NCBI RefSeq assembly: GCF_006345805.1
Contig: NC_043007.1
Location: 10,354,001 to 10,418,000, forward strand
DNA: 64,000 nt
Reading direction: 5' to 3'
Source of the DNA: Octopus sinensis
Lineage: Eukaryota
The notes under the pieces: generated by a model
Seen by the model: only the letters and a program-made list of their open reading frames with translations
Databases searched by the model: none
What the model was told of the DNA's origin: nothing
Shown here: positions 913 to 40,025 of the stretch, in pieces
Position numbering within the stretch: position 1 is the first letter of the stretch
Layout: every line of letters starts with the position of its first letter
Position numbers and translations under genes: made by a program

Positions 913-1030
913 ACTTACTCAGAAATTATAGGTTCGTTCGGTAGTTGTGGAGCTCACACAATGATATGAAGCTAAAGCAACGATGTTCTTCATACAGGAA
1001 TAAGTTAAAACTCTCGATGTCAGTCTCTCT
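913..1030 (-). other. Putative non-coding first (5'-UTR) exon module, copy A, with GT donor
   Basis: ACTTAC at 913-918 reads GTAAGT on minus. The adjoining ~110 bp aligns with 24102-24240 and 39883-40025 (shared GGTTCGTTC-G-TAGTTGTG, AAAG-TAAAGCAACGAT-TTC, GAATAAGTT-AAA-CTCTC). Its coding exon would lie left of the window. Confidence 0.55.
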
Positions 1031-2208
1031 CTCTATATATATATATGTACCAACGAACGAAATTCTCAGACCTTGAGTCGCCCTTTTGCTTCTGCTAAAT
1101 ATTAGTAATATGTGGGGGGGGGGAGTGCATCTGTGTGTATACATACATCTGCGCATGAATACACACACACACTCACAAACACTCACACACTCACACACAC
1201 ACACACACACATATGCTTATCCACTTTAGTTTTTGTGCATGTTCCATACTGATTGCCGTCCTTTAATCTCCTGAATCTTGTTTAGGGCATCCTGTTATGC
1301 TATAGTGTATTACGTTACTATATGAAAACACAATGGTGACAAGGGGTCTTCCACTTTAACAACTTGGAGATAACGTCCAAACGAGAGACTCTCTCCACCG
1401 TTACTAACCTGCTAGAAATTGCGACAAAGTCACCTTTAAATCACATCATACCATATTAAGTAATGAATTCTATACTGAACATTGTAGAGTGCGATGTGCA
1501 AAAATCGGAATGGTCACTGTTGATAACTCTTACCCACGCATCTACTCAATCAAAGTCGATCTAGTTCACAGTTATACTATATAGAGAAAAGGCCCTGTGC
1601 TACAGTTATGAACTTTCAACTATATATGTACATATAGATATATATACATACGAGCAAAACACCTACCGTCCAATGGTGCTGAGTTGTCAAACATTTAAAC
1701 CAAATTTTCTCAAAAAAACTTGTCCGACCCTCCCATAGGCCTTCCATTTGAGAAACACTGATTTAACCTAAATTTGAGACACCAGCAAAAGAAGAAATAT
1801 ATACTTTTTTCTATTCGAAAGAAAAACGATTTTATTCACACAAATATGCAACCGAAGAGTTTAAAGTACCACTAATGATAAGGCTGTTGACTGGGAGAGC
1901 ATAAACATGGTTTTAAACAGTAAGCTTTGGGGGAAAGAAACGTGCCTTTAAACAGTACAAAACAAAAAAATGGAAGGTGCAGTTATGTACAGGTTGACGG
2001 AAGAAAGCAGGACAAAAACGGCTTTTCGATCGCATTCTCACCTGGATCGATTTCTGTAATTTTTTGAAGACTCATACACGCCCTGATACCGTTGGTATCT
2101 ACATATCAAATTTGAGCGCAATCGGATAGAGGATGCCCGAGATTCGAGAAGACACACAGACAGACAGACAGAACGGATTTTATATAGAGATACACACGCA
2201 CACACACA

Positions 2209-2293
<85 letters not shown>

Positions 2294-2309
2294 TTATAGA
2301 TGTAGATAT

Positions 2310-2460
2310 ATACTCTTTACTCTTTACTCTTTTACTTGTTTCAGTCATTTGACTGCGGCCATGCTGGAGCACCGCCTTTTAGTCGAGCAAATCGACCCCG
2401 GGACTTATTCTTTGTAAGCCCAGTACTTATTTTATCGGTCTCTTTTGCCGAACCGCTAAA
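2310..2460 (-). mobile_element. 3' half of abundant tRNA-derived SINE with (GAGTAAA)n tail
   Basis: CTCTTTTACTTGTTTCAGTCATTTGACTGCGGCCATGCTGGAGCACC...GCCGAACCGCTAA recurs at ~16345, 40050, 48545, 59880 and 60250. Confidence 0.8.
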
Positions 2461-2707
2461 TATAGTTATATAAATTAGAGTGGGTGAGTATTTACTTATA
2501 GATGCGTGTACGTGGGTGTGCGGGCGGGCGTGTATAGGTATGGACATACCCGCTTACGCGAATACTATGAACATTTTTACTTCCCTACCTTTACTTCCTC
2601 CCCTCATTTAACGGTCATTCTAATAGTTTGTTTGTCTTTATAACGGTCAATCACGCAGTAATTTGCATTTGCTTAACAGTCATTTCATAGCATTTTTTCG
2701 ATGGTCG

Positions 2708-2768
2708 GATAACTGAAGAGATGGCGACGTGGGTTTCCGCTCAGACGTCCGAAACTCGGTGTTTTATC
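2708..2768 (+). ncRNA. Minimal type I hammerhead ribozyme-like motif (HHR1)
   Basis: Stem I GATAA(2708-12)/TTATC(2764-68); core CTGAAGA(2713-19); G2720..C2750 closing a GACGT/ACGTC stem II with a 5-nt bulge; GAAA(2751-54); 2-bp stem III; GUU triplet (2761-63). Lies upstream of a Penelope-like ORF. Confidence 0.6.
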
Positions 2769-2816
2769 ATGGCTACCAAATAATTGCCACAAAATAGATT
2801 TGCAGATATATATATA

Positions 2817-2851
<35 letters not shown>

Positions 2852-2890
2852 ATAACAGAGAGATAGATATTTCACTTTGTTGTCATGAAA

Positions 2891-2997
2891 GGAAATATGT
2901 CCAATTCAATTGGTGGAGCTTATTCAAAATGTAAGAGTGGAGATGTCTCTTCTCTGGATAGTGATCTCACTCTACTCAACCGGTAGTTACACATACA
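2891..2997 (+). repeat. ~110 bp direct repeat, copy 1 (copy 2 at 7268-7380)
   Basis: GGAAATAT...AAATGTAAGAGTGGAGA...CTCTTCTC...TAGTGA...CAACCGGTAGTT-ACACATACAT in both; each copy follows a (TA)n tract and precedes (CATA)n. Confidence 0.85.
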
Positions 2998-3104
2998 TGC
3001 ATACGTAGTACATACATGCATACATACATACATACTAGGTGGGGTCGAAATTTTATTCTGTGATTCAACATACTACTTGGTATTTATGTTGGTGTGAGAA
3101 ATAA

Positions 3105-3826
3105 ATGAACAAGGGGTGTGTGTACTTCTTGGAAAGGTTCGAGGAGTGGTACTCCCTGGAAAAGTCCAAGGACTTGGAGCTGAAGGGGAGGGAGTATTGC
3201 CACCCTACCCCTCAGGGACTGTTGAAAACACCAGGTTCTACGCACAATAATGAACAAGACTACACCCCATTCGGTAACATCCACCGCCCCCGGGGAGTAT
3301 TAAAAACACCAGGCACTACACAAAATTATGAACATAGACTCTACAAACACCCACACAATCATAACAACCTAATCCCTCAAATTCACCACCCACACAACGG
3401 AAATCCTCGTTTTTACACGAATAACCTCTACACACACAAAAACAACCAGCATCCCACAACAAACATTTTTGTCACACAGCAGAGGAAACCGATAGCAAGG
3501 TGAAACCCGAGACACAGGAGAAACCCATAGTAATCAACATCTCCCACTTATCCTTATCCGACATTAATATAGACATCGTATCCAAAGGATTCAATTTCAC
3601 ACCCACACACTCTAGAGCCAATCAAAAGGAAATTAAAGACAGCGTCTCAGAGTTCTGCAGGAAATTAAGACATGCGGCACTGACCGACTTTGATGATCAG
3701 GATGAATCACTGGTCAAGAACAAAAGCGAATACACCCTCCACAAAGAAAGAGACAAAAGACTAGATGAATTTTGCAAACACGTCGAAAACTTTTACTATC
3801 ACACCCTGCACAAACAAAAAACTATC
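3105..3826 (+). mobile_element. Penelope-like element N-terminal fragment (truncated before RT core)
   Basis: ORF 3500..3862 VINISHLSLS...SKGFNFTPT...EFCRKLR matches the PLE N-terminal signature VINLS..L....LSKGL.F.PTP...F.RKLR; preceded by a low-complexity H/N/T/P-rich ORF (3105..3503). Confidence 0.65.
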
Positions 3827-6581
3827 TCAATCTTTGATGATGAAGATTTCATTGATGCATAAAGAGCATTTTTTATTTCTATTATTGTATACTGGTGCCG
3901 AAGTGAGTATTTCCCAATTTAAATTAAAATCTATATCCTTGCTCTTAAGTTCCCAAATAGAAGTACTTAACCCTGTAGAATTCATCCTATTTTTATTTTT
4001 AAAAGAGTATCTATGATAGTTCAGTCGTTGTTTCATACTATTTTTAGTCGCACCAATATACACCCTACTATCATGTTGTGTGTTCACAACGCATTGATAA
4101 ACCACCACTTTCCTCAGACATTCATTATTGAACACACATTTGTCTTTGATTCTGCAATTGCAGCTGCTATCTGATTGAGAAAATTTAACCTTGCTGCGAT
4201 TCACTGCATCCCTATTATAGTTGATAATGTTAACCCCATTCTCAATACTTAATCCTATATTCAACGGGAGTCCATGTTTAACATTATTAGTAATATTCAA
4301 ATCATTAGGACTACTACTATGAATAGCAATATCATCAACCAAATTATTATTTGTTGCTACAGAAATAGTACTATTATAACCAACGTGAGGGTTACTCACG
4401 CTCGCACTATTAGGTTTATTAACACTCAAGTTATAGTGAGGCACATTTCTGCTACCCAAGTTTATCTATCTATCACTATAGAAGCGGTCAATTTTTCTAT
4501 TATTAAAGGAGGAAATAATGGTGGCTAAATTGTGCGTAAGGCTGTCTCCTATTCTGATAGTTTCGTTGTTCATTATTTTATAATATTTATTTTTAGCCTT
4601 CTCAAAATGCTTGTACAATAAACTATGGATCATTCTAACTATATCCGTTTTAATTTGCATTGCATATGGGATTATCAGCCATAGTGCATCATTATCACTA
4701 TGTGGGTTACCTATCAAATTCTTATTATCAACAAAAACTCTGTTCCTCCGCCAAACCCTATATCTTCTAAGATTAAAATTACCAAGATTATGACTAAAAT
4801 CATTGTTATAATTGATATTGTTATTATGGTGTCACTAAGTTTTTCCATTATCGTAGATAATATCATTATTATTATAATTCATATTATTATTAATATTATT
4901 AATATTAATGTTATGTGCTAAGTTATTCAAATTAAGATCAACAGCTCCATTAATACCAATACTAGTATTATTTCCATACACAATTTTATATATCCTATTG
5001 TTCTTTACCCCAAAGTTGTTATTAACCATTCGAAAGCCGTTTGTGTTTGTAGTAGTAGATCCATCTTGATTCGAAAGATTATTATTAGGTATATACTTAA
5101 TTTTACCCGTATAACCTGCCTTATGTAATGTAGTGTTATATCTTTCACTGTGCTTATTAAATATGTCCAGATTTGAGGGATAGATGAGATTCTCTGACTA
5201 ATGCAACGCAATAGTGACCTTTTAATTTGAGGGTGGGGGGGTGGGGGTGATTGCTAGAGTAGTTTATATATACTAAATTAGAATTAGGTTTAATATAAGG
5301 TTCGTGTATCCCATTAGTAAGGTTGCTATTAACATCTAAATAATTGACAGTAATTTTCATTTTCAATAATTATAGATAAACCAAAACTCTTTAAAATGTA
5401 TGCAGTCGTTTTTTCAGTAAATTTAGCCTTCTATTGGATATATTCCTAACTAGAAACAAAGCGTCGTCTCTATATGGACCGCCCTTTAATTCAGGGAATT
5501 CCCTATTTAGATTATCTAGTAAATACATCCCTACTAAATCCGTCACTTCCGCTGAATCCGCGGCGATCCCATGGTGATGTCAAATAAATTAGGTGTGTCT
5601 TTTCTAGCCCAAATTTGTTATCAAATCTATTAAAGTTTTTCTAGCCGTTAAGATAACCTTATTTCCCTCATACTTAAGTTAGTGTGTCTCCTAGCAAAAT
5701 TAAAGCCTTATTTAATATAATAGTTTAATAGAGGAATAATAGTTTTGTATATCCAGTTGGATAATTTATTGTTCTATTTTTACTAGCTAGCGCTAATGCT
5801 AGAAACCAGTCTAATGTACCCTGTGTTTTTTTCCAAAGACTAAGCTTAATTTTGTTACGTATAGTTGGTAAGTATTTGTCAAGGATAAGTTTGCTTAATT
5901 TACCTAAGTCAGACTTGGTAGGGCAAATCAATCTAACATGTGTATTACCAAGGAAATTTTCCTTGTGGTCCTTAAGTGTAATTCTCGGTCTGATGGGGGT
6001 ATAGGGTTCAGATTTGTCTTCAAAATAGTAATCAAGCATAATTTCTCCAGCCTCTAAATTTAGTTCTCTGAGTGTATTAAAAGGTACAATCTTATACTTC
6101 TTCGTAATTTCCTTATGCAATAATTCATGGTATGTAAGAATGTCAATATTGTAAATGCTACTAGTTTTGTCAGAATGGGTTAATATACCATTCTTACCCT
6201 TAAGAGGTCTTATTAATTCTTTTAATTTTCTTTGGTACGGATTGTTCCTCAATGGGTAATTTTTAAATTTAATATTTTTGATGGTGTCCCATAATTCTTG
6301 CTCGAAGTTGTCCAGATGTTTTTTGGTGGTGGAGATTTCCTAGATTTGAATGTATTTCCGGTTAGTTTAATTGCTTCCTCATAGCTACTTCATGTTCCAT
6401 TGCAGTTGATGTCAATACTTCCTCCTTCATTCACTTTTGTAATACTGTTTTCATGTTGGAAAACCTTCCATCTAACCCTGCGAATAAACTCGTTAATTCT
6501 ATAAATTAGCTCTTTGGTGTAGTGGTCCTTAGTAGGAATGGGTACATCTTTCATTGATGAATTGATCAGTATCTTCTCCAT
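3827..6581 (-). mobile_element. Decayed Penelope-like element, Naiad-type RT + C-terminal GIY-YIG endonuclease
   Basis: N-terminus MKDVPIP..HY..ELI..INEFIRRVRWK; RT ITLKDHKENF...RLICPTKSDLGKLSK; YRDD near 5470; thumb VNYLDV...YI..SSNHP; endonuclease CNC...C...C..VVYQ...YIGAT...R...H..SF...LS..IW.LK...W.I...C.LC..E. Several frameshifts and stops. Confidence 0.85.
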
Positions 6582-6945
6582 TTTACTAGCAGTTATTATC
6601 CTGTAGGATTAATGCACTATACTTGGATGTATTCACTTATACCATAAATACATAGAGTATTGAGTGGATATTTCATGTACACAAGTATTAGCAATTCAAA
6701 TTCCTCAGAAAGTTAACTTAAAATTACAAAGTGAGATAGGGGTTGTGAGTGTAACCCTCTATGGGATAACATATATCCAATATACTGCCAGTAATATATA
6801 TATATATGTTACCGAAATGCAATTCGAAAAAGCCCGCCATTTACATAGATGTATAAGGGGTGAACAGTTCTATATGCTACGGTGGATACGATGGTTGTTC
6901 GTCTGGTATGTTGATTTTGTTCATTCATTATAAATCTTGAATCAC

Positions 6946-7009
6946 GCTGTCACTGATGTGTAAGGGACGCAGCCACTGCGTTGATTACGAAATCACGGTG
7001 GTCTGCAGC
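6946..7009 (+). ncRNA. Type I hammerhead ribozyme-like motif (HHR2), one core deviation
   Basis: Stem I GCTG(T)CA/TGCAGC; core CTGATGT (A9>U); stem II GTAA/TTAC extended by ACGCAG-CCA-CTGCGT; GAAA 6989-92; stem III TCAC-G-GTGG; GUC triplet 7001-03. Confidence 0.55.
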
Positions 7010-7156
7010 TAAATTCTGTTTTTAAATGACTTGCTTCGAGAAATGCATTCGGGTAGGATATGTTATTTGGTAGTTTTGACTTTAAGAGTCCCTCCTAGCG
7101 TGCGGCATTATGTGTAATAATGCCCTCTATATAATATATATATATATAAGTATGTA

Positions 7157-7222
<66 letters not shown>

Positions 7223-7267
7223 GTATGTATATATATATAATACATATGATAGAGAGATATGACGAAC

Positions 7268-7380
7268 GGAAATATATCCTATTCATTTGTTTGGGCTCAT
7301 TCGAAATGTAAGAGTGGAGACGACTCTTCTCCGAGTAGTGACCTCACGCTACACAACCGGTAGTTTACACATACATACAT
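7268..7380 (+). repeat. ~110 bp direct repeat, copy 2
   Basis: About 80% identical by eye to 2891-2997. Confidence 0.85.
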
Positions 7381-7500
7381 ACATACATACATACATACAT
7401 ACATAAAGGTTATAGTGATAAATTAGATGGTTATTGACGATTAAGTCTATTTCGGCATATTTGGCATTGAAATGTTTTTCTTTTGACTTTGTTTATAAGT

Positions 7501-7541
<41 letters not shown>

Positions 7542-7544
7542 TAA

Positions 7545-8257
7545 GTGCTTGAGTATTTAGATTACGTTTTCCTAGATACTGGAACAGCAATTTGCATTGC
7601 AGAAGAAGTTATTACTTTTTCAATTGATTTTGACAGTCAAGAAAGCTTTAAGGCTGTATTATGTAATGGTACACCCGAAAAAACTGGTCATTCAGGAGGG
7701 GTAATTAAAATAATTGAATTAACCACATCTGTGGTTGATATGCCTGCTACTTACAAATGTGCTTCCATTTCAACACGTATTTGAATCCATAGTTGGAAAA
7801 ATAACAGGAACATGAATATCAAAAGGCTTAATTGGCAATAAAATTAAAGAAGATGTAACAAACTTAAAGATAATCAAATTTTCTCCAGTAAAAACTAATG
7901 TGGAGGAATTGCCATTAAAATTAGTTGATACTTTAAGCTAAGATAAAAAAAATATCTGTATAAAATGTGCCTCAATATTGAGACAGTTTTCGTTTCTGAG
8001 CAGTTAGCAGGAAGATCACCTGGTAATATCCATCATGCAAGGTGGCTAACAAGTACAAACAGAATCCTTCGATTATATGTTTCGGAAACAATCCCCAAAA
8101 GATTATTATGGATCTTGTTAAAATCATAACGCAAGTGTATGCTCTAAGCTGGTTCTGGATTAAATCTTACTCAAAGTTGCTCGGAGGAGCAAGTAATTTT
8201 TGGTATATGGCACAACTAATGCAAGATATGAACCAAGATCATAAAGAAGTTTTGTAG
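7545..8257 (+). mobile_element. DDE transposase remnant, Sola2-like
   Basis: CNGT...TG..GGVI..IEL motif, then after frameshifts PGNIHHARWLTSTNRILRLYVS...LVKII..VYA..WF.IK. Superfamily assignment is from remembered motifs only. Confidence 0.5.
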
Positions 8258-8429
8258 AAATAGTGAAAAACTATCGGATCGGTCCCAATTTCTGAGTTAA
8301 TTCATTTAGAATTTTCTCGTCATCAGCGATAAATACGATAAGAAAATAAATGAGATACTTACTTGTACCCATGGAAGAAGTAAACACAAAGTCATGAGCA
8401 AACTTAAGTACCCCATATATAGAAATTCC

Positions 8430-9179
8430 ATAGCAGCCAAAAGACTACTATTTTCTTTTACTACAAAAATAAGTCTCCGGTATGCAACTTGTTGCAAAAA
8501 ACCCTTATCATTATAATTATATAAATCTTTACCGAATATGGTCCTTTTCCATACCGAAATACTACTAGGTGAAATTTGTTGATTTTATTAAATTAATTAT
8601 ATTTCACCCTATATCTGTAATGACTATTTTACTCCCCTACGACAAAACTACGAATCTTGTTTTCGGCAGTACTATTTTGTGACTCACGTGGTAAAATTCT
8701 GGAGGGAAATACGAATTCACTTGTCTATATAAATGTGGATATGCGGATTGGCTTTTATATATTTTGATGTCGTTTGATCGAAAATATAAGAGGTAAGTTT
8801 ACCTAGCATTTCTAGATTTATGGGGAATATTATGTTGATAAAGGAAATGAACCTTACGATTCTAATCCAGAAACGTACGTCCATAATTAACCGATGACTG
8901 TGTGATTTAATTTTTTTTCTTCTTTTTTTTTTGCCATATGTGAGTTACAAATATTGTTATCTGTGGAGACTTATTTTTGTAGTAAAAATAAATAGTAGTC
9001 TTTTGGCTGCTATTTCTAAAATTTTCGGTATGTGGTTTAAGCAACTTGTTGCAAAAAACTCTTATTATTATACTTATATAAACTTTTATCGAATATGGTC
9101 CTTTTCCATACCGAAATACTACTAGGTGAAATTTGTCGATTTTATTAAATTAATTATATTTCACCCTATATCTATAATG
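8430..9179. repeat. Local duplication: 139 bp direct repeat (8484-8622, 9041-9179) plus 49 bp inverted segment (8430-8478, 8965-9013)
   Basis: Direct sequence comparison. Confidence 0.85.
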
Positions 9180-9384
9180 TATATATATATACGAAAGAAG
9201 GTTTGAAAATGCGATTTTAAAAGATGTTTATTTACTTTACCAGTTTCACTCCTTGGAAAAAGATTGTCAAAAGTAACATGTAGAAGTTTGGTTGCGTTAA
9301 TTATTGGTTTGTTACAAAATGCTACATTACATATATACAGTCTTTGGTAGCAAGGACATGTTAAGGACATGAAAAAGTTTAACA

Positions 9385-9419
9385 ATATATATATATATAT
9401 ATATAATATATATATATAT

Positions 9420-9481
<62 letters not shown>

Positions 9482-9494
9482 CATACATACATAT

Positions 9495-9542
<48 letters not shown>

Positions 9543-9770
9543 CATATATATATATATATATTTATACATATATATATATATATACATATATATACATACG
9601 TATATATACATACATATATATATATACATATATATACATATATATATACATGTATATACATATACATATATATATACACATATATACATATATATATACA
9701 AATATATATATACATATACATATATACACATACATATATACAAATATACATATATATACATATATACATA
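9385..9770. repeat. Long degenerate (TA)n/(TACA)n microsatellite
   Basis: Direct reading; source of the Y/I/M/C-rich ORFs at 9327-9816. Confidence 0.95.
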
Positions 9771-9829
9771 TCCTATCTAGTTTCAGCTCAGAGCTGCGGC
9801 CATGCTGATGCACCACCGTTTTGTGCTAC

Positions 9830-10175
9830 CCTATTATTACTAAGAGCCTCCTCTAATATGTGGCACTTGGTGAAGAATGGAGTTTGATATAGCTACCCTC
9901 ATTTGCACCTCTTGCCGTCAGGTAGGTTCATCTGGGACTCTCGACAGGAAGAGGTCCAGCTTTGATTTAAAAGCCCCTACATCTACTTTGTGAACGTTTC
10001 TCAGACTCTTTGGGAGAATATTAAAAAGCTGTGGGCCCTTGAAATCCAGGCTGTCGCAGTAACTGCTCCTGAAGCGTGATGGCATTGTTGGGATCTTTGG
10101 CACTATGCAGTGTCGTCCCGTTCTGGCATTGGTGTAACTTTCAATGCCAAAATGTGGCACATTCCTTCCAAGATC
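9830..10175 (-). mobile_element. CR1/L2-group LINE 3' end
   Basis: KGPQLFNILPKSLRNV....FKSKLDLFLSRVPDEP is the typical C-terminus of CR1-group ORF2. Confidence 0.7.
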
Positions 10176-11333: not shown

Positions 11334-12545
11334 TTATTTCTGTTTCACTCTGAGCATTTTTTTAATTTCGTCTATAAAATTCTGGTTCCTACAGCTGTAG
11401 ATAATGGGATTTGTACAGGAACCGATGTAAAAACTGTGTCGTGCGAACCAATACAAAATTGATGTTGCCGAAGTCGTATTTAATGACTTCATCAGCGAAT
11501 TTATCATTATGGCGCCAAAGCTAGGCAAATAAGTCACTATAAAGACTACAGTAATCATCATCATCGTTATAGTGGTACGCTTTATCCTGTCGGCTTGTTC
11601 TTTTGCTCGTCTTTCGTTGTTCGCTTCCCGTAGTTTAGCCCTAAGAGGCGCAGTACTTTTCGTATATACCTTTGATATTTCATCCGAGGAAACTTTAGAT
11701 GAAATGTCGGTATTAGATAATTCCACTTCCTCTGTAGAAAGATTCGAAGGTAATCGATTAGAATCAACAATTTTTGGTATGTTAAACCACTTCTGTTGAA
11801 TTTCATCGGGATAGGGAATGCTTGTAGCACTATTTCTATTTTGTTGTGATTTGACACATTTTGTTTTCTCCATAACCTTCATACGTCGAAGAATTATGGT
11901 GTACAGAATAAAGAGAATAACAATCGTAACCATTGCTAGGAGATTGTATAAACCAAAGAATGCAAGTTGGTAATAATTAGGATTGTGGTCGTCCTTTGCT
12001 GAGCAAAAATATAAATAGATACCAGAATATTTAGTTGGTTTCTTGACACTTCCATAGTAAAGAAGAGTCATAAATCCCTGTGTTGCACAGAAAATAAAAA
12101 TACAGGCTGTGATGATTTTCGCAGCTTTCATTGTTATCTGAGACTTCAGTGGTTGGCATACTTTTCTGTATCTCTCTGCTGCAATGGCCAGTAGAAAACC
12201 ATAGTTACAAAGTCCTGTGAAAACTGCCAAACACAAATGGAACTGACACAGTGTATCCCAGGTTGTCATCATAGGGTAAATATTTTGGGCAATACGAGCT
12301 GGTGTCACACAGGCACATATTATCAAATCAGCACAAGCTAGCATCACGACAAAGAAATAAGTTGGTGAAAATTTTAAACGAAATCCATAAACGTAAATAG
12401 TTAAGATATTTCCAACCAAACCCGTGGTCATAGTTAATGTAATTAGAATAGTAAACGGAAGTCTTATCAAAACTTGTTGTCTGTTGAGTTCTTCGATGGT
12501 GATATTATGCTCCGTACCGTCTGTTAAATTCGTATATGATGACAT
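11334..12545 (-). CDS. Orphan class A (rhodopsin-like) GPCR, 403 aa, single coding exon (paralog 1)
   Basis: Seven hydrophobic segments; TM1 GN, TM2 LACADL, TM3 Cys and ERY, ECL2 Cys, TM6 FIVTYLP, TM7 NPIIY; N-terminal NLT/NIT sequons; long ICL3. Start set at MSSYT (12545) because the upstream 29 aa cross a splice acceptor. Confidence 0.93.
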   Translation of the reverse strand: MSSYTNLTDGTEHNITIEELNRQQVLIRLPFTILITLTMTTGLVGNILTIYVYGFRLKFSPTYFFVVMLACADLIICACVTPARIAQNIYPMMTTWDTLCQFHLCLAVFTGLCNYGFLLAIAAERYRKVCQPLKSQITMKAAKIITACIFIFCATQGFMTLLYYGSVKKPTKYSGIYLYFCSAKDDHNPNYYQLAFFGLYNLLAMVTIVILFILYTIILRRMKVMEKTKCVKSQQNRNSATSIPYPDEIQQKWFNIPKIVDSNRLPSNLSTEEVELSNTDISSKVSSDEISKVYTKSTAPLRAKLREANNERRAKEQADRIKRTTITMMMITVVFIVTYLPSFGAIMINSLMKSLNTTSATSILYWFARHSFYIGSCTNPIIYSCRNQNFIDEIKKMLRVKQK

Positions 12546-12582
12546 CCTTCTCCAATTTTGGGGTGTGTTTTCTCTGTTCAAT

Positions 12583-17888: not shown

Positions 17889-18026
17889 ATAATAAAAATA
17901 ATTACAACAGAATCAAAATTAAAAGGAGAGTGCCATTGTCATCTAGTGAACGATATTTCAACATCTCGTGTGTCTTTAACAGGTTAAAAAAAAAAAAGTA
18001 GATTTTGTCAATCTACTTCATTTTGG

Positions 18027-18929
18027 TTAATATATAAAGGATTGAGGTAACTTCTCCAGAAGATATAGATCCCATGTACCTTTTATCAGTTGAAAGCAGA
18101 AGGCGCACAAATGGGTTGTTTCTCCACAAACAAAACAATGTGGATTTTTGCCCCCAGTTATTATGTGTATTACCGTTCTATTTTGGAGACGGATGTGGAC
18201 CGAGATTCTTTTTATGTATTGTGGCCTGATCTGGAGAAGTATCTCCAGGTCAACTCCGAACCAGTCCTCTCTGGCAGATTTTGTCACCTCTATCGGAACG
18301 GTATCTGATCCTTGCTCGATTATGCATCCCAGAAGATACCACATATTAAGTCCTGGTTGTATCCTGGGAATGCGGACATGTGCTGTTCTTTTTCCCATGT
18401 GGGAGTGGTACATAATGATCTTGCTGGTTTTGCAAGGGATCCTTGAGTGCTTCTTAGCGAGGGCTTCTGATTTAAAAAGCACTGAAATGATACCGTATTG
18501 TCTGCTCCTCGCTATATACTCGGTGTCATCCCTGATGCATGTTAGCGCAGCTTCAATATCTGTTTGTGTTATTAAAGTTGCTTTTCTTAGATGCATCTGA
18601 AAAACACCGTTCTTTTTTCCACTGCTTCAATGGCCTCTGACGGAAACGTTAGGTTGGCCCAGGTTTTCTCGTATTTGATGAGTTTCCAGGCTTCGGCCAA
18701 CTTTTCATCTTTATTTGTGATGTCTAGGCTGAGTTGTAGTCTTATTTTGGCTGCTGCCGTTGCGAAAGTATTCTTGCTGTTGGTAATATCACTATCACTG
18801 TTGCTGTTTTTGTTGCTGTTGTTGCTGCTGTCGCTGCTGTTGTTGTTGCCATCGTTTTGGTTGGTGTTGTTGGTGTTGTTGACACTTTTGCTATCGTTGT
18901 TGTCACCATCGCTGCTACTGCTGACGTTG

Positions 18930-18978
<49 letters not shown>

Positions 18979-19291
18979 AGCTGCTGCTGCTGGCACTGGT
19001 GGTAGCGGTGTAGATGGTAGTGTTTTCGCTTGTGTTGTTGGTGTTTATAATTTTCTTCTTTTTGTTTCTGCGGTGGTAAAGAAGAGGAAAGAAGCAAGGG
19101 GAATTCTTTTCATACATTCCACATGCGCTATTGTTGTTGTTGTTGCTACGGCAGTCGCTGACTTGTTCAACTTGACTGTTCTGCCTTATGATTACCCCGC
19201 TGTTCTTTTTAGTGGACGGACGGTTTTCGTTCGCCATCTTTGATATTAGCGAGGGTGTGTTGTAATCCAAATAAATCCCAAAATAACTCAC
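18027..19291 (-). mobile_element. Tx1-type gag-like ORF1 (one frameshift near 18590), no ORF2 attached
   Basis: C-terminal zinc knuckle CFVCGETTHLCAFC; RRM-like GIISVLFKS; N/S-rich microsatellite-encoded N-terminus; homologous to 37699-38675. Confidence 0.7.
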
Positions 19292-23763: not shown

Positions 23764-24095
23764 GGGATATGGTTAATACGTTCTATATATCACCGATAAT
23801 ATACAGGAGATACTTCCCAGCACCAATGCATCATATATAATACACATTGCCAATTTTTTTCAACACTAGACTAACTTATGACAGGAAAGCTTTATATTAC
23901 TGAGAACGTATGAAACAATGATTAATTAAAAGTCTGAAAACGAGCATGAATGTTTGGAACAAAATTATGAAAATGCTTTGGACAAGCAAAGTGTAAATGA
24001 GTATTTCAGAGGATAATTATTAATTGTGCACACCATGTTTTTTCGTAAAAAAAAAGATAACTGCTTTGAATACACACAATAAACACTAACAAGGT

Positions 24096-24240
24096 ACTTA
24101 CCCTGAATCGGTTCGTTCTGTGGTTGTGGATCTGCACAATGAACGCAATGCTACTTCGATAACAATGACAATACTATAAAGCTGAACCAACAATATTCAT
24201 CGTACAGAAATGAGTTAAGACTCTCTCCGACTCTGTATAA
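24096..24240 (-). other. Putative non-coding first exon module, copy B (likely exon 1 of GPCR1)
   Basis: Minus strand TTCAGG|GTAAGTACC with donor at 24101-24096; homologous to copies A and C; adjacent intron 23780-24095 is also conserved with 38900-39265. Confidence 0.65.
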
Positions 24241-24995
24241 GCACACACGTGTATGCATATGAGTGCGCGTATGAGTATGTATGCCTATGTGTGTGTGTGT
24301 GTGTATGTGTCTGGGTCTTTGTGTACATACATCTATGCACACGCTCATGCATACATAATTGCTATCCTCCAATAAAATTTCTTTTATTATCAATAACATC
24401 CGTGAAATATAAATGTTTACATTCTTATGTAGAGCATCCTGTTTTGCCACTAAGCAGAGCATGCTTGTATGAAAAGACAATAACTTAACCACTTAAAGAT
24501 AACCATCTAATGGGCTACACTCTGCGAGGTTACTAATTTGCTAGAAATTAAAACTGAACCGGAATCACGCTAAGTAGCGTTTCGTTCAACTTTACGCTTT
24601 TAGCCCAAATTCCGCCGAGTTCGACTTTGTACTTCACCCATTCCGGGTAGATAGAATATGTACCAGTTGAGCACTAAGGTCGATGTAATCGTCTTACCCT
24701 CTCTCCTGAACTTGCTGGCCTTTTGCCAACATTTGAAATGAATGTTAAACATTGAATTCTATATTGAACAAAGTAGACTGCGATGTACAAACATAGGAAT
24801 GGTTACGGTTGGAAACTCTTATTCACGTGTCTATTCAATCACATTCGCGTTGGTTCACAACAATACAACAAAAAGATCAAAGAGGAAGAAGAAAAACTGA
24901 ACAACTACGACAATTTGAAGTGGGGAATTCGAAGATTGTGCTCAATGAGAAGAGGAGATGTGATATCAATACTAATACAACGCGATATGGACCAC

Positions 24996-25990: not shown

Positions 25991-26165
25991 GTATCCCCAC
26001 ATTGCTTACCTTGCAAATGATCGCACCTGCAACCCCTGAACAAATTTCCGATCAAGTCGAGGTCACCAATTTTTAGCAAGACTGCATTTTTTAGTAATAA
26101 AGGTATGTAATGTTGTCGTAAGAATTGCGGGTTAAGTCCTGATATATTATGTCCTCTCTTAAATA

Positions 26166-26830
26166 CGCGAGCTGGCAGAAACGTTAACACGCCGGGCGAA
26201 ATGCTTAGCGTTATTTCGTCTGACGTTACGTTCTGAGTTCAAATTCCGCCGAGGTTGACTTTGCCTTTCATCCTTTCGGGGTCGATTAAATAAGTACCAG
26301 TTACGCACTGGGGTCGATATAATCGACTTAATCCGTTTGTCTGTCCTTGTTTGTCCCCTTTATGTTTAGCCCCTTGTGGGTAGTAAAGAAATAGGTATTT
26401 CGTCTGCCGTTACGTTCTGAGTTCAAATTCCGCTGAGGTCGACTTTGCCTTTCATCCTTTCGGGGTCGATTAAATAAGTACCAGTTACGCACTGGGGTCG
26501 ATATAATCGACTTGATCCGTTTGTCTGTCCTTGTTTGTCCCCTCTGTGTGTAGCCCCTTGTGGGAAGTAAAAAAGCGATAGTAACGTTCTTTATTTAAAA
26601 GGCGGCAAGCCGGCAGAAACGTTAGCACGCCGGGCGAAATGCTTTGTGGTATTTCGTCCGCCGCTGCGTGCTGAGTTCAAATTGCACCGATAACGACTTT
26701 ACTTTTCATCCTTTCGGGGTCGATTAATTAAGTACCGGTGAAACACTGGGGTCGATGTAATTGACTATCCCCCTCCCCCAAATTTCAGGTCTTGTGCCTA
26801 TAGTAGAAAGGATTATGTCCTCTCTTAATT
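26166..26830 (+). mobile_element. CORE-type tRNA-derived SINE cluster (head + 2 tandem bodies, then a second copy)
   Basis: Head GAGCTGGCAGAAACGTT...GAGTTCAAATTCC (B-box-like); central CCTTTCATCCTTTCGGGGTCGAT..ATAAGTACCAG; 184-bp period (26212, 26396). Confidence 0.85.
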
Positions 26831-27940: not shown

Positions 27941-30622
27941 TAGTTTTATTTTTATAGCGTGCTTTCACTTCACTACCGAGCGCAGCTCTGTGTGCCTTGG
28001 GTATGTGCTGTGGTTTGTTGTGATGCTCTTATGGTTACTGCATTGAAAGTGTTTTGCGTAGGATGTGTGCAGTTCCCAGTAGTGCAAGTTTCTGTATGTT
28101 ATATGTGTTTGTAAGTCCTGGTGTTTTTGTTATGTATTTGTCTGAATATTTTTTTATCATGCCTAATGCACCTACTATGATAGGAATTGTTTCTGTTTTC
28201 AGATTCCACATTCTAGTTACCTCTATTTCCAGGTCTTTGTATTTTGAGAGTTTCTCCATTTCTTTTAGAGAAACGTTGTCATCTGTCGGTATTGATACAT
28301 CAATTAGAAAGCATTTTTTTACTTCATGATCTCTGACAACTATATCTGGTCTGTTGGCCTTAATTTCTCTATCTGTGTGTATCGGCATATCCCAGAGTAT
28401 GGTTGCTGTCTCGTTTTCTGTGACATTTTCTGGTGTGTGCCTATACCATCTTTTTTCTGTTGTTATTCCATAATGTTGGCATAGCTTCCAATGTATGTAG
28501 GTTCCAACTCTGTCATGTCTGTGAATATATTCCTTCTTAGCCAGGACTGGGCAGCTAGAGATAATATGATTTATTGTTTCTTGTCCATCTCCACATATTC
28601 TGCAGTTACTTGTAATATTTCTTTTCATTACATGTTTTTGGTAATTTCTGGTGGGGAGGCTTTGGTCTTGTGCTGCAATTAAAAATCGCTCTATCTCTGC
28701 TTTGAGTCCTGAGCTTCTCAACCATTGCTGGGATTTTTCTTTGTCTATTTCTTTTGCGTTTAGTTTAGTCCAGTATTTACCATGAAGGGGCTTTTCTTGC
28801 CATCGTTTTATCATGGTTCGTTGCTGTTCTATTTTTAGTTTGGATTTCATTTGTTTTATAGCTTTTGTTGTTTCCTCATCTTCTTCTTCTTCTTCATGTT
28901 TATTAGGTGGTATGATTTCTTGTTTGTATTTGTCAGCTTCCTTAAATACTGAGAACAGTTTTTTGTTTTCTCGTGTTTTGCCGCTATCTGGATCAGTTTT
29001 CCTTCCTTCTGAAGTAGATATTTTTGCAGTCCTATGGTGGTTTATTTTATAGTAGTTTTCTAGCTGTATAAGGCCTCTACCACCTTCTATACGTTGTATA
29101 TATAGTCTTTCTATGTCAGATTTTGGGTGATGCATCCTAGATCTTGTCATTATTTTTCTTGTTTTCCTATCTATTTTGGTCAGTTCATTTCGTGTCCAGT
29201 TAAGGATATTGTAGCTGTAACTTATAACTGGGACAGCTAAAGTGTTGATACCTATTATCTTGTTTTTAGCATTGAGCTCTGTTTTTAGTATTGATCTAAC
29301 TCGTCTATAATATTCTTTTTTTATTTTCTCTTTCATTTGTGTGTGTTGTGTCTTATCTAGTTCATGGATTACTAAGTATTTGTAAGTTTGGCTTTGGTCT
29401 AATTCTTTTATTTAATTGGTTTTATCTAGTGTGATGTTGTTACTCTTAACTAGTTTTCCTCTTTTCATGGTTACTTTGGCGCATTTTTCTAATCCAAATT
29501 TCATATCTATTTCTTTGGTAAATCCATGAACTGTCTTTAATAGTGTTTCCAGCTGTTTGTCATTTGCAGCGTATAGTTTTAGGTCATCCATATATAAAAG
29601 GTGGCTGATCGTTTTGCCGTAACATTTATATCCGCATCCAGTTCTATTTAGCATATCAGATAGAGGTGACAGTGCCAAGCAGAAAAGGAGTGGAGAGAGC
29701 GTGTCTCCCTGGAATATTCCTCTTCTAATGGGGATATCTTTGGTTTTCATGAGTCCCTCTTTTGTTTGGAGGTGTAGGACTGTTTGCCATTTATTCATAG
29801 AGTGCTCTATGAATTTTATGATTGTTGGTGCTACTTTGTTAATGGCTAGTGTTTCGAGGATCCATGTGTGGGGGATGCTATCAAACACCTTTTTGTAGTC
29901 AATCCAGGCCATACTGAGGCCTTTCCTCTTTCTGTGGCTGTCTTCAGTTATGGCTTTGTTAATCATTAGTTGATCTTTACAGCCATATGAGCCTTTGCGG
30001 CATCCTTTCTGCTCTTCTGGGAACAGTTTGTTTTCGTCCAGGTGCTTGTTCAGCCTTTGCGATATCACTGCAGTAAATGCCTTGAACATAGTAGGGAGGC
30101 AGGTTATTGGTCTGTAGTTTTCTGGTTTTGCTGTTTCATTTGATTTGGGAATTAAGATGGTTTTCCCCTTCGTGAGCCATTCAGGCATTGTCTCTGGCTC
30201 TGCTAGTATGTTGTTAAAGTTTTCAGCCAGCTTTTTGTGCATTCCTGTTAGATATTTCAACCAGAAGTTGGGGATCTTGTCATGCCCAGGTGCCTTCCAG
30301 TTGCTTAGTCTTTGCAGTGCCTGGGTGACCTCTTCAGTTGTTATGGGGGTCCAAAGTTGTTCAGATGCCGAGTTTGTTATTTTGATACTCCTTTTTTTGG
30401 TTGTTCGTTCGCCGACCATATTTCTCTCCAGAATTCTTCCAATTCTTCTGCCGTTGGTGCTGCAGCGACTTCTATTTTATTTTTTCCCACTTCTTGATAG
30501 AACTGTTTGGGGTTGGAGTTGAACTTTTTGTTTTGTTCAAAGAAGCGTTGGCGTTTCTCGTACCGGCGGATCCTTTGTGCTTTGTTAAGGATATCTTGCT
30601 TCAGCTTTTCTTTTATCTCAGG
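27938..30622 (-). mobile_element. 5'-truncated R4/Dong-like non-LTR retrotransposon (RT + CCHC + RLE) between (TAA)n tracts
   Basis: RT motifs WKAPG.D, YRPITCL, QKG, DYKK.FDS, QGD.LSP, YMDD; CRIC..ETINHIISSC..RHD; RPDIVV..LIDVSIP..EK..KY.DL. The two track ORFs are in frame, split by one TAA at 29412-14; frameshift near 30419; flanked by (TTA)n on both sides. Confidence 0.95.
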
Positions 30623-34640: not shown

Positions 34641-34649
34641 TGGAGATCG

Positions 34650-34894: not shown

Positions 34895-34957
<63 letters not shown>

Positions 34958-37900: not shown

Positions 37901-38680
37901 CATTGCAAGTTCATTTTCATATCTATACCTAACCAGTTTTAGGTAGTTTCTTGATCTCCAGTATTGTGACTTCGTCTTATTCTAAATCTGCCAAGATAGC
38001 CGCCACTAATGGATATTTCTGGCGGCACATTCAGCACCCTAATCTTGGCAAGACGTTGACCGCGATAGCTGGAATTAAGAAAAAATTGTCCTTACTCAAA
38101 GTGGTTGCGGAATTATATCTAGCTTCTTCTTCCGTCCCAAATCACATCTCAGTGGTTCCAAACTTCTTTCCTCGGGTAATGTGAATCTTCAGTTCTCAGA
38201 TGCACCCAAGTCATTTTTGTATTTCGCTCTCGGGAGCATTTTCCACCCGCTGAGACTTTACTCCGATGCAACGGTATGTCATCGTGCATCTTGCAATATT
38301 TTCTATCATGTCGAATGGAGGTTTTAGAGTTACCCTTCTTCCATTTCTTTTTACAATTTTTCTTGCTAATTTTAATTCTTCTTCGTCTATGTGGTAACTT
38401 TCCATATTTCTCGCCTCTGACACCAAAGACGCAGTGGCGATATTTGCGATTTTATGTTTCATTTCTTTTGTATTGCTGTTGCTGTTATTGTTGTTGTTGT
38501 TGTTGTTGTTGCTGTCACTGCATCTTTTGTTGCTGTTGTTGTTCTCGAAAGTTTTGGTGTCATTCAGTTTAGGCCATTCTAAACTGATATTCTCAATTCT
38601 TTTCTTGTTCTCAATTTTCCCCAACAAGAAGCGCGTTCCTTTGTCGAAAATTATGATGGCTTCTATATCAACCATCTTTA
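34650..38680 (-). mobile_element. Near full-length decayed L1-Tx1 element (ORF1 + APE + RT)
   Basis: ORF1 pieces with CHKCGSVRHIKFSC; APE GCVNVRGL...ISETR; GY.KLNASL; SPG.NGL.YE.Y...NFRPISLL; LDQSKAF.RV..RQGCPLSPLLY; (TG)n inserted at 34880-34990. Confidence 0.88.
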
Positions 38681-39265
38681 AAAATTACTGAAAATTCCAA
38701 AGCTGTTTTTGTTAAAATTCAAAAATTATTTATGCGCGCCCCTGCAAAATAGGGGATGTCTCTACACAAAAGTACAATCTGCGCAATGCAGGCAATCTCA
38801 GAAACGTAATGGTAACAACAGAAATGAAAAGACCTTAGAAGGTCGAAAAGCTTACAAACACTTTTTAAACTTATGGCGCACCAAATTTCCGTGGCTTCAC
38901 AGTATGGCGGTAATAATATATGACCAAAATAAACATGCCTAATTTATTATGTGATAAACAGGACATATTTTCTTGCGTCCATGCATCATACATAATACAC
39001 ATTCCCAATTTTTTTCAACCATTAGATTATGTCGGAACTAATGAAAGGAAAGCTTTATATTACTCAGAACGTATGAAACAATGGCTAACTAAAAAACAAG
39101 TGTGGACATTTACGATATACATGTATAAACGCTTTGGACAAGCAAAGTGTTAAGGAGTAGTTCAGGAAGTAACTATTAATGGTGCCTACCGCCTTTCTTC
39201 GTCACATACACACAAAAAAAAAACACCATTGAATACACGCAATAAACAAAAGCAAGATACTTACC

Positions 39266-39866
39266 TATTTCTCTACTACCCACAAGGGGCTAAACACAGA
39301 GAGGACAAACTAGGACAGACAAACTGCTTAAGTCGATTATATCGACTCCAGTGCGTAACTGGTACTTAATTTATCGACCCCGAAAGGATGAAAGGCAAAG
39401 TCGACCTTGGTGGTATCTGAACTCAGAACGTAGCGGCAGACGAAATACCTATTTCTTTACTATCCACAAGGGGTTAAACACAGAGGAGACAAACAAGGAC
39501 AGACAAACTGCTTAAGTCAATTATATCAACCCCAGTGCGTAACTGGTACTTATTTAATCGACCCTGAAAGGATGAAAGGCAAAGTCGACCTCGGTGGTAT
39601 CTGAACTTAGAACGTAGCGGCAGACGAAATACCTATTTCTTTACTATCCACAAGGGGTTAAACACAGAGGAGACAAACAAGGACAGACAAACTGCTTAAG
39701 TCGATTATATCGACCCCAGTGCGTAACTGGTACTTATTTAATCGACCCTGAAAGGATGAAAGGCAAAGTTGACCTCGGTGGTATTTGAACTCAGAACGTA
39801 ACGGCAGACGAAATACGGCTACGCATTTCGTCCGGCGTGCTAACGTTTCTGCCAGCTCGCCGCCTT
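39266..39866 (-). mobile_element. CORE-type SINE concatemer (head + 3 bodies, 184-bp period) with TSD
   Basis: Units start at 39266, 39450 and 39634; flanked by CAAGATACTTACC at 39253-65 and 39871-83. Confidence 0.9.
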
Positions 39867-39876
39867 AAAACAAGAT

Positions 39877-40025
39877 ACTTACCCTGAAAGCATAGGCTCG
39901 TGCGGTAGTTGTGAAGTTCTACAATAAACATAATATTACTTCAATAATAATGACAACAATATAAAGTTAAAGCAACGATATTCGTCTTACAAGAATAAGT
40001 TTAAAATCTCTCTCTCCTCTCTCTG
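39877..40025 (-). other. Putative non-coding first exon module, copy C (no cognate coding exon found)
   Basis: Minus strand TTTCAGG|GTAAGTATC with donor at 39882-39877; homologous to copies A and B. Confidence 0.6.

What the first reader, a model, noticed from the sequence alone, without database searches (positions are those of the whole stretch)
913..40025. Three copies of a conserved non-coding exon/donor module, but only one coding exon between them: a modular GPCR array with an extra first exon
Seen: three homologous ~110-145 bp modules (919-1030, 24102-24240, 39883-40025) each end in a minus-strand GTAAGT donor. The first ~300 bp of intron is also conserved between the 24 kb and 40 kb copies, although surrounding DNA is unalignable TE debris. 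Both GPCR coding exons begin at a conserved acceptor just upstream of the ATG. Minus-strand order is CDS2 (52.8 kb), module C (39.9 kb), module B (24.1 kb), CDS1 (12.5 kb), module A (0.9 kb). Inference: each repeat unit of the array is a leader exon, an intron of ~11.5 kb and one coding exon. Module C is then either a second promoter for GPCR1 or the relic of a paralog whose coding exon was lost. Because donors and acceptors are alike across paralogs, leader choice (including splicing past a neighbouring CDS) could control which receptor is made. ORF-based annotation cannot see this layer.
Basis: partly seen in the sequence, partly recalled or inferred. Interest (0 to 1): 0.8.

Follow-up and report, generated by a model that had tools for sequence, protein, structure and literature searches.

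The report
Duplicated leader exons, octopus GPCR array

Summary
The window is Octopus sinensis chromosome CM016869.1, about 10.354-10.418 Mb. It carries two single-coding-exon class-A GPCR genes on the minus strand and exactly three copies of a 110-145 nt module. Each module ends in G|GTAAGT (nhmmer E 1e-33 to 1e-49; no other copy in the window).

It covers about 0.6-0.9 kb upstream, the exon and about 300 nt of intron, so each module looks like a promoter-plus-first-exon island.

Splicing module C (ATG at 39893, last exon base 39883) to the acceptor at 12582 reproduces RefSeq isoform X1 of GPCR1 exactly (XP_036362953.1). The same holds in O. bimaculoides. C is therefore an annotated distal alternative first exon of GPCR1, and it carries an in-frame ATG. 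B is the proximal first exon; its junction appears in an O. vulgaris gene model.

The C/B pair is conserved in three Octopus species. No relic of a coding exon lies between them.

"One module per array unit with an 11.5 kb intron" does not generalise. Nothing supports leader choice deciding which receptor is made.

The closest analogue is the mouse V1R promoter/first-exon islands. Interest is low to moderate.

The parts
39883..40025 (-). Module C: distal alternative first exon of GPCR1. It carries an in-frame ATG at 39893-39891 (MLSG...) and ends in G|GTAAGT.
   Evidence: nhmmer E 1e-42. Spliced to 12582 it translates exactly to RefSeq XP_036362953.1 / P0063. The CDS span of 28,560 bp matches. 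It is 93-95% identical to the O. bimaculoides copy.
39266..39865 (-). 600-bp insert of three 184-nt SINE-like units, starting at position +18 of the intron that follows C.
   Evidence: The insert is absent from O. bimaculoides, where the intron is contiguous.
38954..39265 (-). Proximal intron of C, homologous to the proximal intron of B.
   Evidence: 73% over 319 nt against 23799-24102, E 3e-54. 91.6% to O. bimaculoides L003 10011-10331.
40043..44074 (.). TE block about 4 kb long, inserted about 30 nt upstream of exon C. It includes a Tc1/mariner DDE ORF at 42978-43673.
   Evidence: The collinear alignment with O. bimaculoides jumps from 40042 to 44075. Pfam DDE_3 hit. The block is present in O. 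vulgaris as well.
44075..44620 (-). Ancestral upstream (putative promoter) island of C, displaced by the TE block.
   Evidence: Homologous to the upstream regions of B, A, E and the O. bimaculoides copies. Orthologous to L003 9434-9762.
24102..24240 (-). Module B: proximal first exon of GPCR1. It is non-coding with an 8-codon uORF and ends in G|GTAAGT.
   Evidence: nhmmer E 2e-48. Its last 81 nt are joined to the GPCR1 acceptor in O. vulgaris gene model P0003. About 86-90% identical to the O. bimaculoides copy.
23799..24101 (-). Proximal intron of B, conserved with C's intron.
24241..24876 (-). Upstream (putative promoter) island of B, with a TATA-like element next to the exon.
   Evidence: Homology to the upstream regions of A, C, E and X out to about -650. 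86.8% over 764 nt to O. bimaculoides. TATA-like run.
11334..12582 (-). GPCR1 terminal coding exon. The acceptor lies between 12583 and 12582. The main ATG is at 12545 and the stop ends at 11334.
   Evidence: ORF. Pfam 7tm_1, E 1e-33. Acceptor fixed by exact translation.
919..1030 (-). Module A: leader exon of the next unit downstream, which lies left of the window. It has a 34-nt deletion relative to B and C, and a 24-codon uORF that ends at the donor.
   Evidence: nhmmer E 9e-33; alignment; uORF. The O. vulgaris copy A' is 98% identical.
1031..1587 (-). Upstream (putative promoter) island of A.
   Evidence: 1356-1587 is homologous to 24485-24876. Also homologous to the upstream regions of E, Ob_X and Ob_C.
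51606..52861 (-). GPCR2 terminal coding exon with the conserved acceptor. The ATG is at 52823. Its leader is not in the window.
   Evidence: No module lies in 52.9-64 kb of the window or in the 24.5 kb upstream of the O. vulgaris orthologue. The acceptor coordinate was counted from the sequence.
28035..30419 (-). Non-LTR retrotransposon ORFs (RVT_1, zf-RVT) that fill part of the C-to-B interval.
   Evidence: Pfam.

Best explanation
The window is part of a tandem array of octopus-lineage orphan class-A GPCR genes.

**Gene layout in the GPCR1/GPCR3 sub-group**
- A promoter island of about 0.6-0.9 kb with a TATA-like element.
- A short 5' leader exon that ends in G|GTAAGT.
- A TE-filled intron of very variable length.
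- One terminal exon that begins 37 nt before the ATG.

**What the three modules are**
They are paralogous promoter-plus-first-exon islands left by duplication of such units.
- B (proximal) and C (distal, 15.8 kb further upstream) are alternative first exons of the same gene, GPCR1. Both splice to the acceptor at 12582.
- A is the first exon of the next unit downstream.

**How it most likely works**
The two promoters put one receptor under two transcriptional regimes. The leaders also differ in uORF content. C in addition offers an in-frame ATG that would add 16 residues to the extracellular N-terminus.

**Shown**
- Homology of the modules and their flanks.
- The splice signals.
- An exact match of the C+exon 2 splice to RefSeq isoform X1 in two species.
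- Conservation of the C/B pair in three species.

**Inferred**
- The modules are transcription starts.
- B serves isoform X2.
- The two promoters differ in regulation.
- The uORFs matter.
For: **Modules and flanks**
- Three module hits in the window, and eleven in about 393 kb from three Octopus species. All are in the sense orientation within the array.
- Homology extends 0.6-0.9 kb upstream and about 300 nt into the intron.
- A TATA-like run lies 25-35 nt upstream of the conserved block in all 11 copies.

**Splicing**
- C + exon 2 equals P0063 / XP_036362953.1 exactly, and the CDS span of 28,560 bp agrees.
- The O. bimaculoides C'' + exon 2 equals P0068 / XP_014770997.1 exactly.
- The O. vulgaris C' reading frame is also open.
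- O. vulgaris model P0003 contains 81 nt of B' joined to the GPCR1' acceptor.
- An acceptor just upstream of the ATG is present in every family member examined, including Argonauta and the divergent paralog P0006.

**Long-term retention**
- Paralogous leaders are about 75% identical, the same as the paralogous coding sequences (73%). The rest of the introns and spacers does not align.
Against: - I could not see any read-level transcript data. The junctions come from predicted gene models: RefSeq Gnomon and the O. vulgaris EVM/PASA pipeline (PMC10700109).
- The models in the two species may not be independent of each other.
- No public transcript contig carrying these genes was found.
- Transcription start sites are not mapped.
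- Between O. sinensis and O. bimaculoides the leader exons are no better conserved than their flanks. C exon is 93% against flanks of 92-94%. B exon is 86% against flanks of 84-90%. Orthologue comparison therefore gives no signal of constraint.
- A 4 kb TE block separates exon C from its ancestral upstream island in O. sinensis.
- An out-of-frame uATG precedes the in-frame ATG of C, so the 16-residue extension may never be translated.
Confidence: 0.8

Rival explanations
1. Orphaned-leader capture. This concerns origin and is compatible with the best explanation. C was once the promoter and leader of a separate paralog between GPCR2 and GPCR1. That paralog's coding exon was deleted, and the surviving leader now splices to the next acceptor downstream, that of GPCR1.
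For: - C lies 11.6 kb downstream of CDS2, much as A lies 10.3 kb downstream of CDS1.
- B, C and the A/X lineage are about equally diverged, as old paralogs would be.
- O. vulgaris shows a possible intermediate stage. Leader A' is followed by a truncated, frameshifted, insertion-split GPCR pseudogene. A second A-like leader, E', and the intact GPCR3' come next.
Against: - No sense-strand relic of a coding exon, acceptor or 3' flank lies between C and B in any of the three species, at protein, profile or DNA level.
- Duplication of the promoter-leader island alone would give the same picture.
Confidence: 0.35
2. Cross-paralog leader choice. Because donors and acceptors are interchangeable, a leader can splice past a neighbouring coding exon, and leader or promoter choice decides which receptor of the array is made.
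For: - Donors and acceptors are near-identical among paralogs.
- C does splice across 27.3 kb and skips B.
- One O. vulgaris model (P0003) strings pieces of GPCR2', B' and GPCR1' together.
Against: - What C skips is a leader exon, not a coding exon.
- Each coding exon is a terminal exon of its own gene, so skipping one would need read-through of its 3' end.
- P0003 removes the first transmembrane segments of GPCR2' and runs on into unrelated sequence. It looks like a merged model.
- The acceptor it uses inside B' is not conserved in O. bimaculoides B'' or in C.
- GPCR2 and the other members lack a module-type leader nearby.
Confidence: 0.05
3. The module is a dispersed repeat or TE fragment that happens to carry a GTAAGT, unrelated to the GPCR genes.
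For: The surrounding DNA is rich in SINE, LINE and DNA-transposon copies. I could not search a whole genome for the module.
Against: - Only 11 copies were found in about 393 kb. All are in the sense orientation, at collinear orthologous positions in three species, and only next to the GPCR1/GPCR3 sub-group.
- The homology has no TE-like ends. It spans upstream island, exon and intron.
- The donor of C is used in RefSeq models of two species.
Confidence: 0.03

Closest known systems
Mouse V1R vomeronasal receptor gene blocks (Stewart & Lane 2007, PMC1955453)
   Same: - Tandem arrays of GPCR genes with a single coding exon.
- Two homology peaks within a subfamily: a 0.5-1 kb promoter/first-exon island several kb upstream, and the acceptor plus coding exon. 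A low-homology, repeat-filled intron lies between them.
- Promoter homology is shared only within subfamilies.
   Different: - That study found one promoter per V1R gene and no alternative promoters. Here one gene has two homologous first exons.
- The receptors are unrelated beyond the class-A fold, and the organism is a mollusc.
- Transcription start sites were mapped by 5' RACE there. They are not mapped here.
Vertebrate odorant receptor genes with non-coding 5' exons, alternative start sites and long-range 5' UTR splicing
   Same: An intronless coding exon is preceded by one or more non-coding leader exons. Alternative first exons and long introns occur within receptor clusters.
   Different: As far as I recall, odorant receptor leaders are generally not recognisably homologous across paralogs to the extent seen here. 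This is a lead from memory, not a test.
Octopus and cephalopod GPCR expansions in tandem clusters (Ritschard et al. 2019, PMC6408891)
   Same: Same type of locus: lineage-specific class-A GPCR paralogs in tandem clusters. The authors suggest shared regulation through proximity or tandem duplication of promoters.
   Different: In the text I searched, the paper does not describe leader exons, their homology or alternative first exons. The accession numbers of these genes are not in its held supplements.
Clusters with variable first exons (clustered protocadherins, UGT1A; my own knowledge)
   Same: Several first exons, each presumed to have its own promoter, compete for a common downstream acceptor. 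C and B both use the acceptor at 12582.
   Different: In those clusters the first exons are the variable coding part and the downstream exons are constant. Here the first exons are short, near-identical leaders, and each coding exon is a separate terminal exon. Only two leaders share one acceptor.

Membership tests
Class A (rhodopsin-like) GPCR | Match to the 7tm_1 profile above Pfam's gathering score | tested here: met
   PF00001 scores 117 and 118 bits against a cut-off of 30.5, covering profile positions 1-260 of 260, for both coding sequences.
Class A (rhodopsin-like) GPCR | E/DRY motif after TM3 and NPxxY in TM7 | tested here: met
   Read directly from the translations: AAERYRKV and SIDRYRKV; NPIIYSCRN in both.
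Octopod-lineage orphan GPCR expansion in a tandem array | Close paralogs clustered on one chromosome; only distant relatives outside cephalopods | tested here: met
   Seven paralogs lie within about 210 kb of CM016869.1. The best non-cephalopod hits are 24-29% identical.
Gene with alternative first exons / alternative promoters | Two distinct 5' exons, each with its own donor, upstream of one common acceptor | tested here: met
   C and B both end in G|GTAAGT. The single acceptor is at 12582.
Gene with alternative first exons / alternative promoters | Both junctions present in transcripts | tested here: inconclusive
   C>exon 2 is in RefSeq models of two species. B>exon 2 appears only in the O. 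vulgaris model P0003. No read-level data or transcript contigs were available.
Gene with alternative first exons / alternative promoters | Independent transcription start at each first exon | not testable with these tools
   Indirect evidence only: a TATA-like run and a conserved upstream island at each module. There is no conserved acceptor at the 5' side of the modules.
V1R-type promoter/first-exon island architecture | An upstream non-coding homology island shared by paralogs, separated from the coding exon by a low-homology intron | tested here: met
   Searches compared with PMC1955453. This is a resemblance of architecture, not of gene family.
Variable-first-exon cluster (protocadherin / UGT1A type) | Many variable coding first exons spliced to shared constant exons | tested here: not met
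   The leaders are short and homologous. Only C has an ATG, contributing 11 nt of coding sequence. Each coding exon is a separate terminal exon.
Spliced-leader (trans-splicing) RNA genes | A short leader on a small separate RNA gene, in many copies, joined in trans to unlinked genes | tested here: not met
   The copies are few, collinear and in the sense orientation upstream of their coding exons. Ordinary cis-splicing reproduces the RefSeq protein. Trans-splicing itself cannot be tested with these tools.

The most novel reading that the evidence does not exclude
Because donors and acceptors are interchangeable across the array, leaders sometimes splice past the nearest coding exon. A, or C after read-through, would be examples. 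Promoter or leader choice would then help decide which receptor of the cluster a cell makes. This would be a receptor-choice mechanism built from duplicated leader exons. A milder version is that the array records how alternative promoters arise when a tandem paralog loses its coding exon and the next gene captures its leader.
Probability: 0.06. Interest if true: 0.7.

Novelty: new member of a known kind. Interest (0 to 1): 0.27.

Why it matters
- It gives a concrete example in a mollusc of how tandemly expanded receptor genes carry their promoter and leader exon along. It also shows how one gene can end up with two homologous promoters.
- The C/B pair of GPCR1, together with the arrangement in O. 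vulgaris of leader A', a pseudogene, leader E' and GPCR3', could show how alternative promoters are born from gene death in arrays.
- For annotators, coding-exon-only models of cephalopod GPCR expansions miss first exons 0.5-37 kb upstream. They can also produce fused models.
- None of this changes what is known about gene architecture in general.

Tried and rejected
1. **Decayed coding exon between C and B.** I ran tblastn with 13 family members, a six-frame profile search, and sensitive blastn with exon 2 plus flanks of five paralogs, in three species. Only antisense repeat fragments turned up.
2. **Leader of GPCR2.** There is no module in 52.9-64 kb of the window or in the 24.5 kb upstream of the O. 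vulgaris orthologue. The second exon of the O. vulgaris model (L004 12268-12351, GTAAGT donor, 12.2 kb upstream) has no detectable homology to the module (z about 1 or less, no nhmmer hit).
3. **Transcript contigs.** The exact GPCR1 and GPCR2 proteins occur only on the genome record. A second protein search with isoform X1 found no octopus transcript fragments. Four short public-run contigs (L006-L009) encode a 51%-identical relative from another species. Their 5' UTRs do not match the module.
4. **Orthologue constraint test.** The leader exons are no better conserved than their flanks, so the test is uninformative.
5. **Supplements of Ritschard et al. 2019.** I searched for these accession numbers and found none.
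6. **Spliced-leader RNA genes and a dispersed TE.** Both were considered and rejected; see the membership and rival sections.
7. **P0003 splice sites.** My exon ends for most P0003 exons come from tblastn and are approximate, so their splice dinucleotides were not interpreted. Only exon 5 (AG...GT) is exact.
Full report
**Where the window comes from.** GPCR2 (window 51606-52823, minus strand) is encoded on Octopus sinensis chromosome record CM016869.1 (assembly GCA_006345805.1). Window position 1 corresponds to about 10,354,001. Both long minus-strand ORFs are class-A GPCRs: Pfam 7tm_1 at 117-118 bits, with E/DRY and NPxxY motifs. They belong to an octopod-lineage orphan expansion. Relatives in Octopus and Argonauta are 53-92% identical. 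The best hits outside cephalopods are 24-29% identical.

The array on this chromosome runs as follows, in window coordinates:

| Element | Position |
|---|---|
| P0013 | about 104.5 kb |
| P0004 | 87.6 kb |
| GPCR2 | 52.8 kb |
| C | 39.9 kb |
| B | 24.1 kb |
| GPCR1 | 12.5 kb |
| A | 0.9 kb |
| unseen stretch | 11 kb |
| leader E | -12.4 kb |
| GPCR3 (P0010) | -21.2 kb |
| P0005 | -46.2 kb |
| P0006 | about -97 kb |

All are on the minus strand except P0006, which is on the other strand.

- The three modules align well. Each ends in G|GTAAGT, with the first intron base at 918, 24101 and 39882.
- An nhmmer profile built from six copies finds exactly these three in the window (E 9e-33, 2e-48, 1e-42). 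The only other hit is the displaced piece of C's own intron.
- The B/C intron homology is real: 23799-24102 against 38954-39265, 73% over 319 nt. In C a 600-bp insert of three 184-nt SINE-like units splits it from the exon. O. bimaculoides lacks this insert.
- Both coding exons begin at a conserved acceptor, and similarity stops at the AG.

- About 0.6-0.9 kb upstream of each module is homologous among A, B, C, E and the O. bimaculoides copies.
- For C this island lies at 44075-44620. A TE block of about 4 kb (40043-44074, with a Tc1/mariner DDE ORF) sits about 30 nt upstream of the exon in O. sinensis and O. vulgaris. It is absent from O. bimaculoides.
- All eleven copies have a TATA-like run 25-35 nt upstream of the conserved block. 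In O. bimaculoides B'' it reads CTATAAAAAC.
- The unit is therefore a promoter-plus-first-exon island. It is not a bare exon, and it has no TE-like ends.

**What C is.** The cluster of GPCR1 holds a second RefSeq protein, XP_036362953.1, named "isoform X1". It has 419 aa and begins MLSGLNRENTPQNWRR before the MSSY start.
- Joining window 39893-39883 (ATGCTTTCAGG, the end of module C) to 12582-11334 gives this protein exactly.
- The recorded CDS span of 28,560 bp equals 39893-11334.
- In O. bimaculoides the same splice of C'' to exon 2 gives XP_014770997.1 exactly. The introns there are 37,374 nt (from C'') and 29,218 nt (from B'').
- O. vulgaris has the same open frame.
C is a distal alternative first exon of GPCR1, and it contributes an in-frame ATG.
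- I infer that a 27-kb intron ending in an 11-nt coding piece came from RNA alignments rather than ab initio prediction. I could not see that evidence.

**What B is.** The 403-aa isoform X2 lies entirely in exon 2, so it does not reveal its leader. The O. vulgaris model P0003 contains LYSIVIVIEVALRSLCRSTTTERTDSG. That is the last 81 nt of B' translated, joined to the GPCR1' acceptor. That annotation combined Iso-Seq, RNA-seq, protein alignments and ab initio predictions. P0003 is clearly a merged model: it holds pieces of GPCR2', B', GPCR1' and further sequence. The B junction is therefore supported only weakly.

**No relic between C and B.** Protein, profile and DNA searches of the C-B interval in three species found nothing in the sense orientation. 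The interval is 15.6 kb in O. sinensis, 15.5 kb in O. vulgaris and 8.0 kb in O. bimaculoides. It holds a non-LTR retrotransposon in O. sinensis. The C/B pair predates the split of the three species. Whether it arose by clean deletion of a coding exon or by duplication of the island alone remains open.

**What A is.**
- In O. vulgaris, used here as the closest stand-in, A' (98% identical to A) is followed 14 kb later by an acceptor and a GPCR coding exon. That exon is split by a 1.4-kb insert, frameshifted and truncated after about residue 252.
- A second A-like leader, E', comes next, and then the intact GPCR3'. The intron between E' and GPCR3' is only 529 nt.
- In O. sinensis, E lies 8,593 nt upstream of GPCR3. 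The stretch between the window and E was not available.
- This arrangement looks like a live version of the "orphaned leader" route by which C might have arisen.

**What does not generalise.**
- Intron length ranges from 529 to 29,218 nt among homologous units.
- No module-type leader lies within 10 kb upstream of P0004, P0005, P0013, P0006, the O. bimaculoides GPCR2 or the Argonauta gene. None lies within 24.5 kb of the O. vulgaris GPCR2.
- All of these genes do keep an acceptor 19-38 nt before the ATG. The two-exon layout is therefore family-wide, but this leader family belongs to the GPCR1/GPCR3 sub-group.

**Constraint.**
- Paralogous leaders are about 75% identical, the same as the paralogous coding sequences (73%). 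The remaining intron and spacer does not align. This argues for long-term retention or gene conversion.
- Between O. sinensis and O. bimaculoides the exons are no better conserved than their flanks. That comparison is uninformative.

**Translation.** Every leader has a uORF: A has 24 codons ending at the donor, B has 8 codons, and C has 17 codons out of frame. C's uORF starts upstream of the in-frame ATG and stops 3 nt into exon 2. From the scanning model, I infer that the 16-residue extension may be made rarely. The leaders may act mainly on translation efficiency.

**Comparison with known systems.**
- The closest described architecture is the mouse V1R gene block. It has a conserved 0.5-1 kb promoter/first-exon island and a conserved acceptor plus coding exon, separated by a repeat-rich intron. 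Promoter homology there is confined to subfamilies. That study saw no alternative promoters.
- Ritschard et al. 2019 describe the octopus GPCR clusters and suggest tandem duplication of promoters, but they do not describe these leaders.
- The protocadherin/UGT1A type and spliced-leader genes were tested against their defining features and do not fit.

**Verdict.** The core interpretation is correct: these are leader exons, and C is a second start for GPCR1. Part of it is already in RefSeq. The speculative layer, leader choice selecting the receptor, has no support. This is a new member of a known kind, of low to moderate interest.

Noticed in passing
window 919-1030, 24102-24240, 39883-40025: Every leader carries a uORF. 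The uATG in CTGTATGA sits in the same alignment column in A, E, B, Ob_B, Ob_C and Ob_X, but is lost in C of O. sinensis and O. vulgaris. C has a different, out-of-frame uATG that overlaps its in-frame ATG.
   Followed up: partly
L004 (O. vulgaris) 90078-90532 and 91965-92697: A GPCR pseudogene lies between leader A' (76318-76453) and leader E' (93945-94078). It is split by a 1.4-kb insert, frameshifted near residue 122 and truncated after about residue 252.
   Followed up: partly
L004 94041-94570 versus L011 (O. sinensis) 1371-9964: The intron between leader E and GPCR3 is 529 nt in O. vulgaris but 8,593 nt in O. sinensis. Parts of the O. sinensis intron match the intron after A' in O. vulgaris at 94.6%. 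This points to a recent rearrangement or an assembly difference.
   Followed up: partly
L004 10001-91043 (O. vulgaris gene model P0003, 638 aa): An 81-kb gene model fuses an out-of-frame start of GPCR2', an internal piece of GPCR2', 81 nt of leader B', most of GPCR1' and unrelated downstream sequence. It is probably a merged annotation.
   Followed up: partly
window 40043-44074: A TE block of about 4 kb (Tc1/mariner DDE ORF at 42978-43673 and an unassigned 325-aa ORF at 41313-42290) is inserted about 30 nt upstream of exon C. O. vulgaris shares it; O. bimaculoides does not. It separates the exon and its TATA-like run from the ancestral upstream island.
   Followed up: partly
window 39266-39865: Three tandem SINE-like units of 184 nt are inserted 17 nt into the intron after C. 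Related copies occur at 24580-24696, 26152-26766 and elsewhere in the window.
   Followed up: no
L012 and L013 (CM016869.1, 77.46 Mb and 10.30 Mb): The paralog P0005 (409 aa) is encoded twice with identical protein sequence. One copy is in the array and one is near the end of the chromosome record. This is either a very recent duplication or an assembly artefact.
   Followed up: no
window 18027-19291 (minus strand): Two adjoining ORFs (189 and 234 aa) lie inside the B>CDS1 intron. One has a CCHC zinc knuckle, like a retroelement gag. Part of the stretch (window 17952-18608) is 92.7% identical to O. bimaculoides at the collinear position. No Pfam hit.
   Followed up: no
window 3827-4459, 5725-6252, 28035-30419: Further TE ORFs: a weak GIY-YIG hit (below Pfam's cut-off), possibly Penelope-like, and a non-LTR retrotransposon (RVT_1, zf-RVT) on the gene strand inside the C>CDS1 intron.
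   Followed up: no
L006-L009 (public-run contigs, 1.4-1.8 kb): These look like transcript contigs from four sequencing runs. They encode a 422-aa relative (51% identical) with at least 120-153 nt of 5' UTR that shows no similarity to the octopus leader. The species is unknown.
   Followed up: partly
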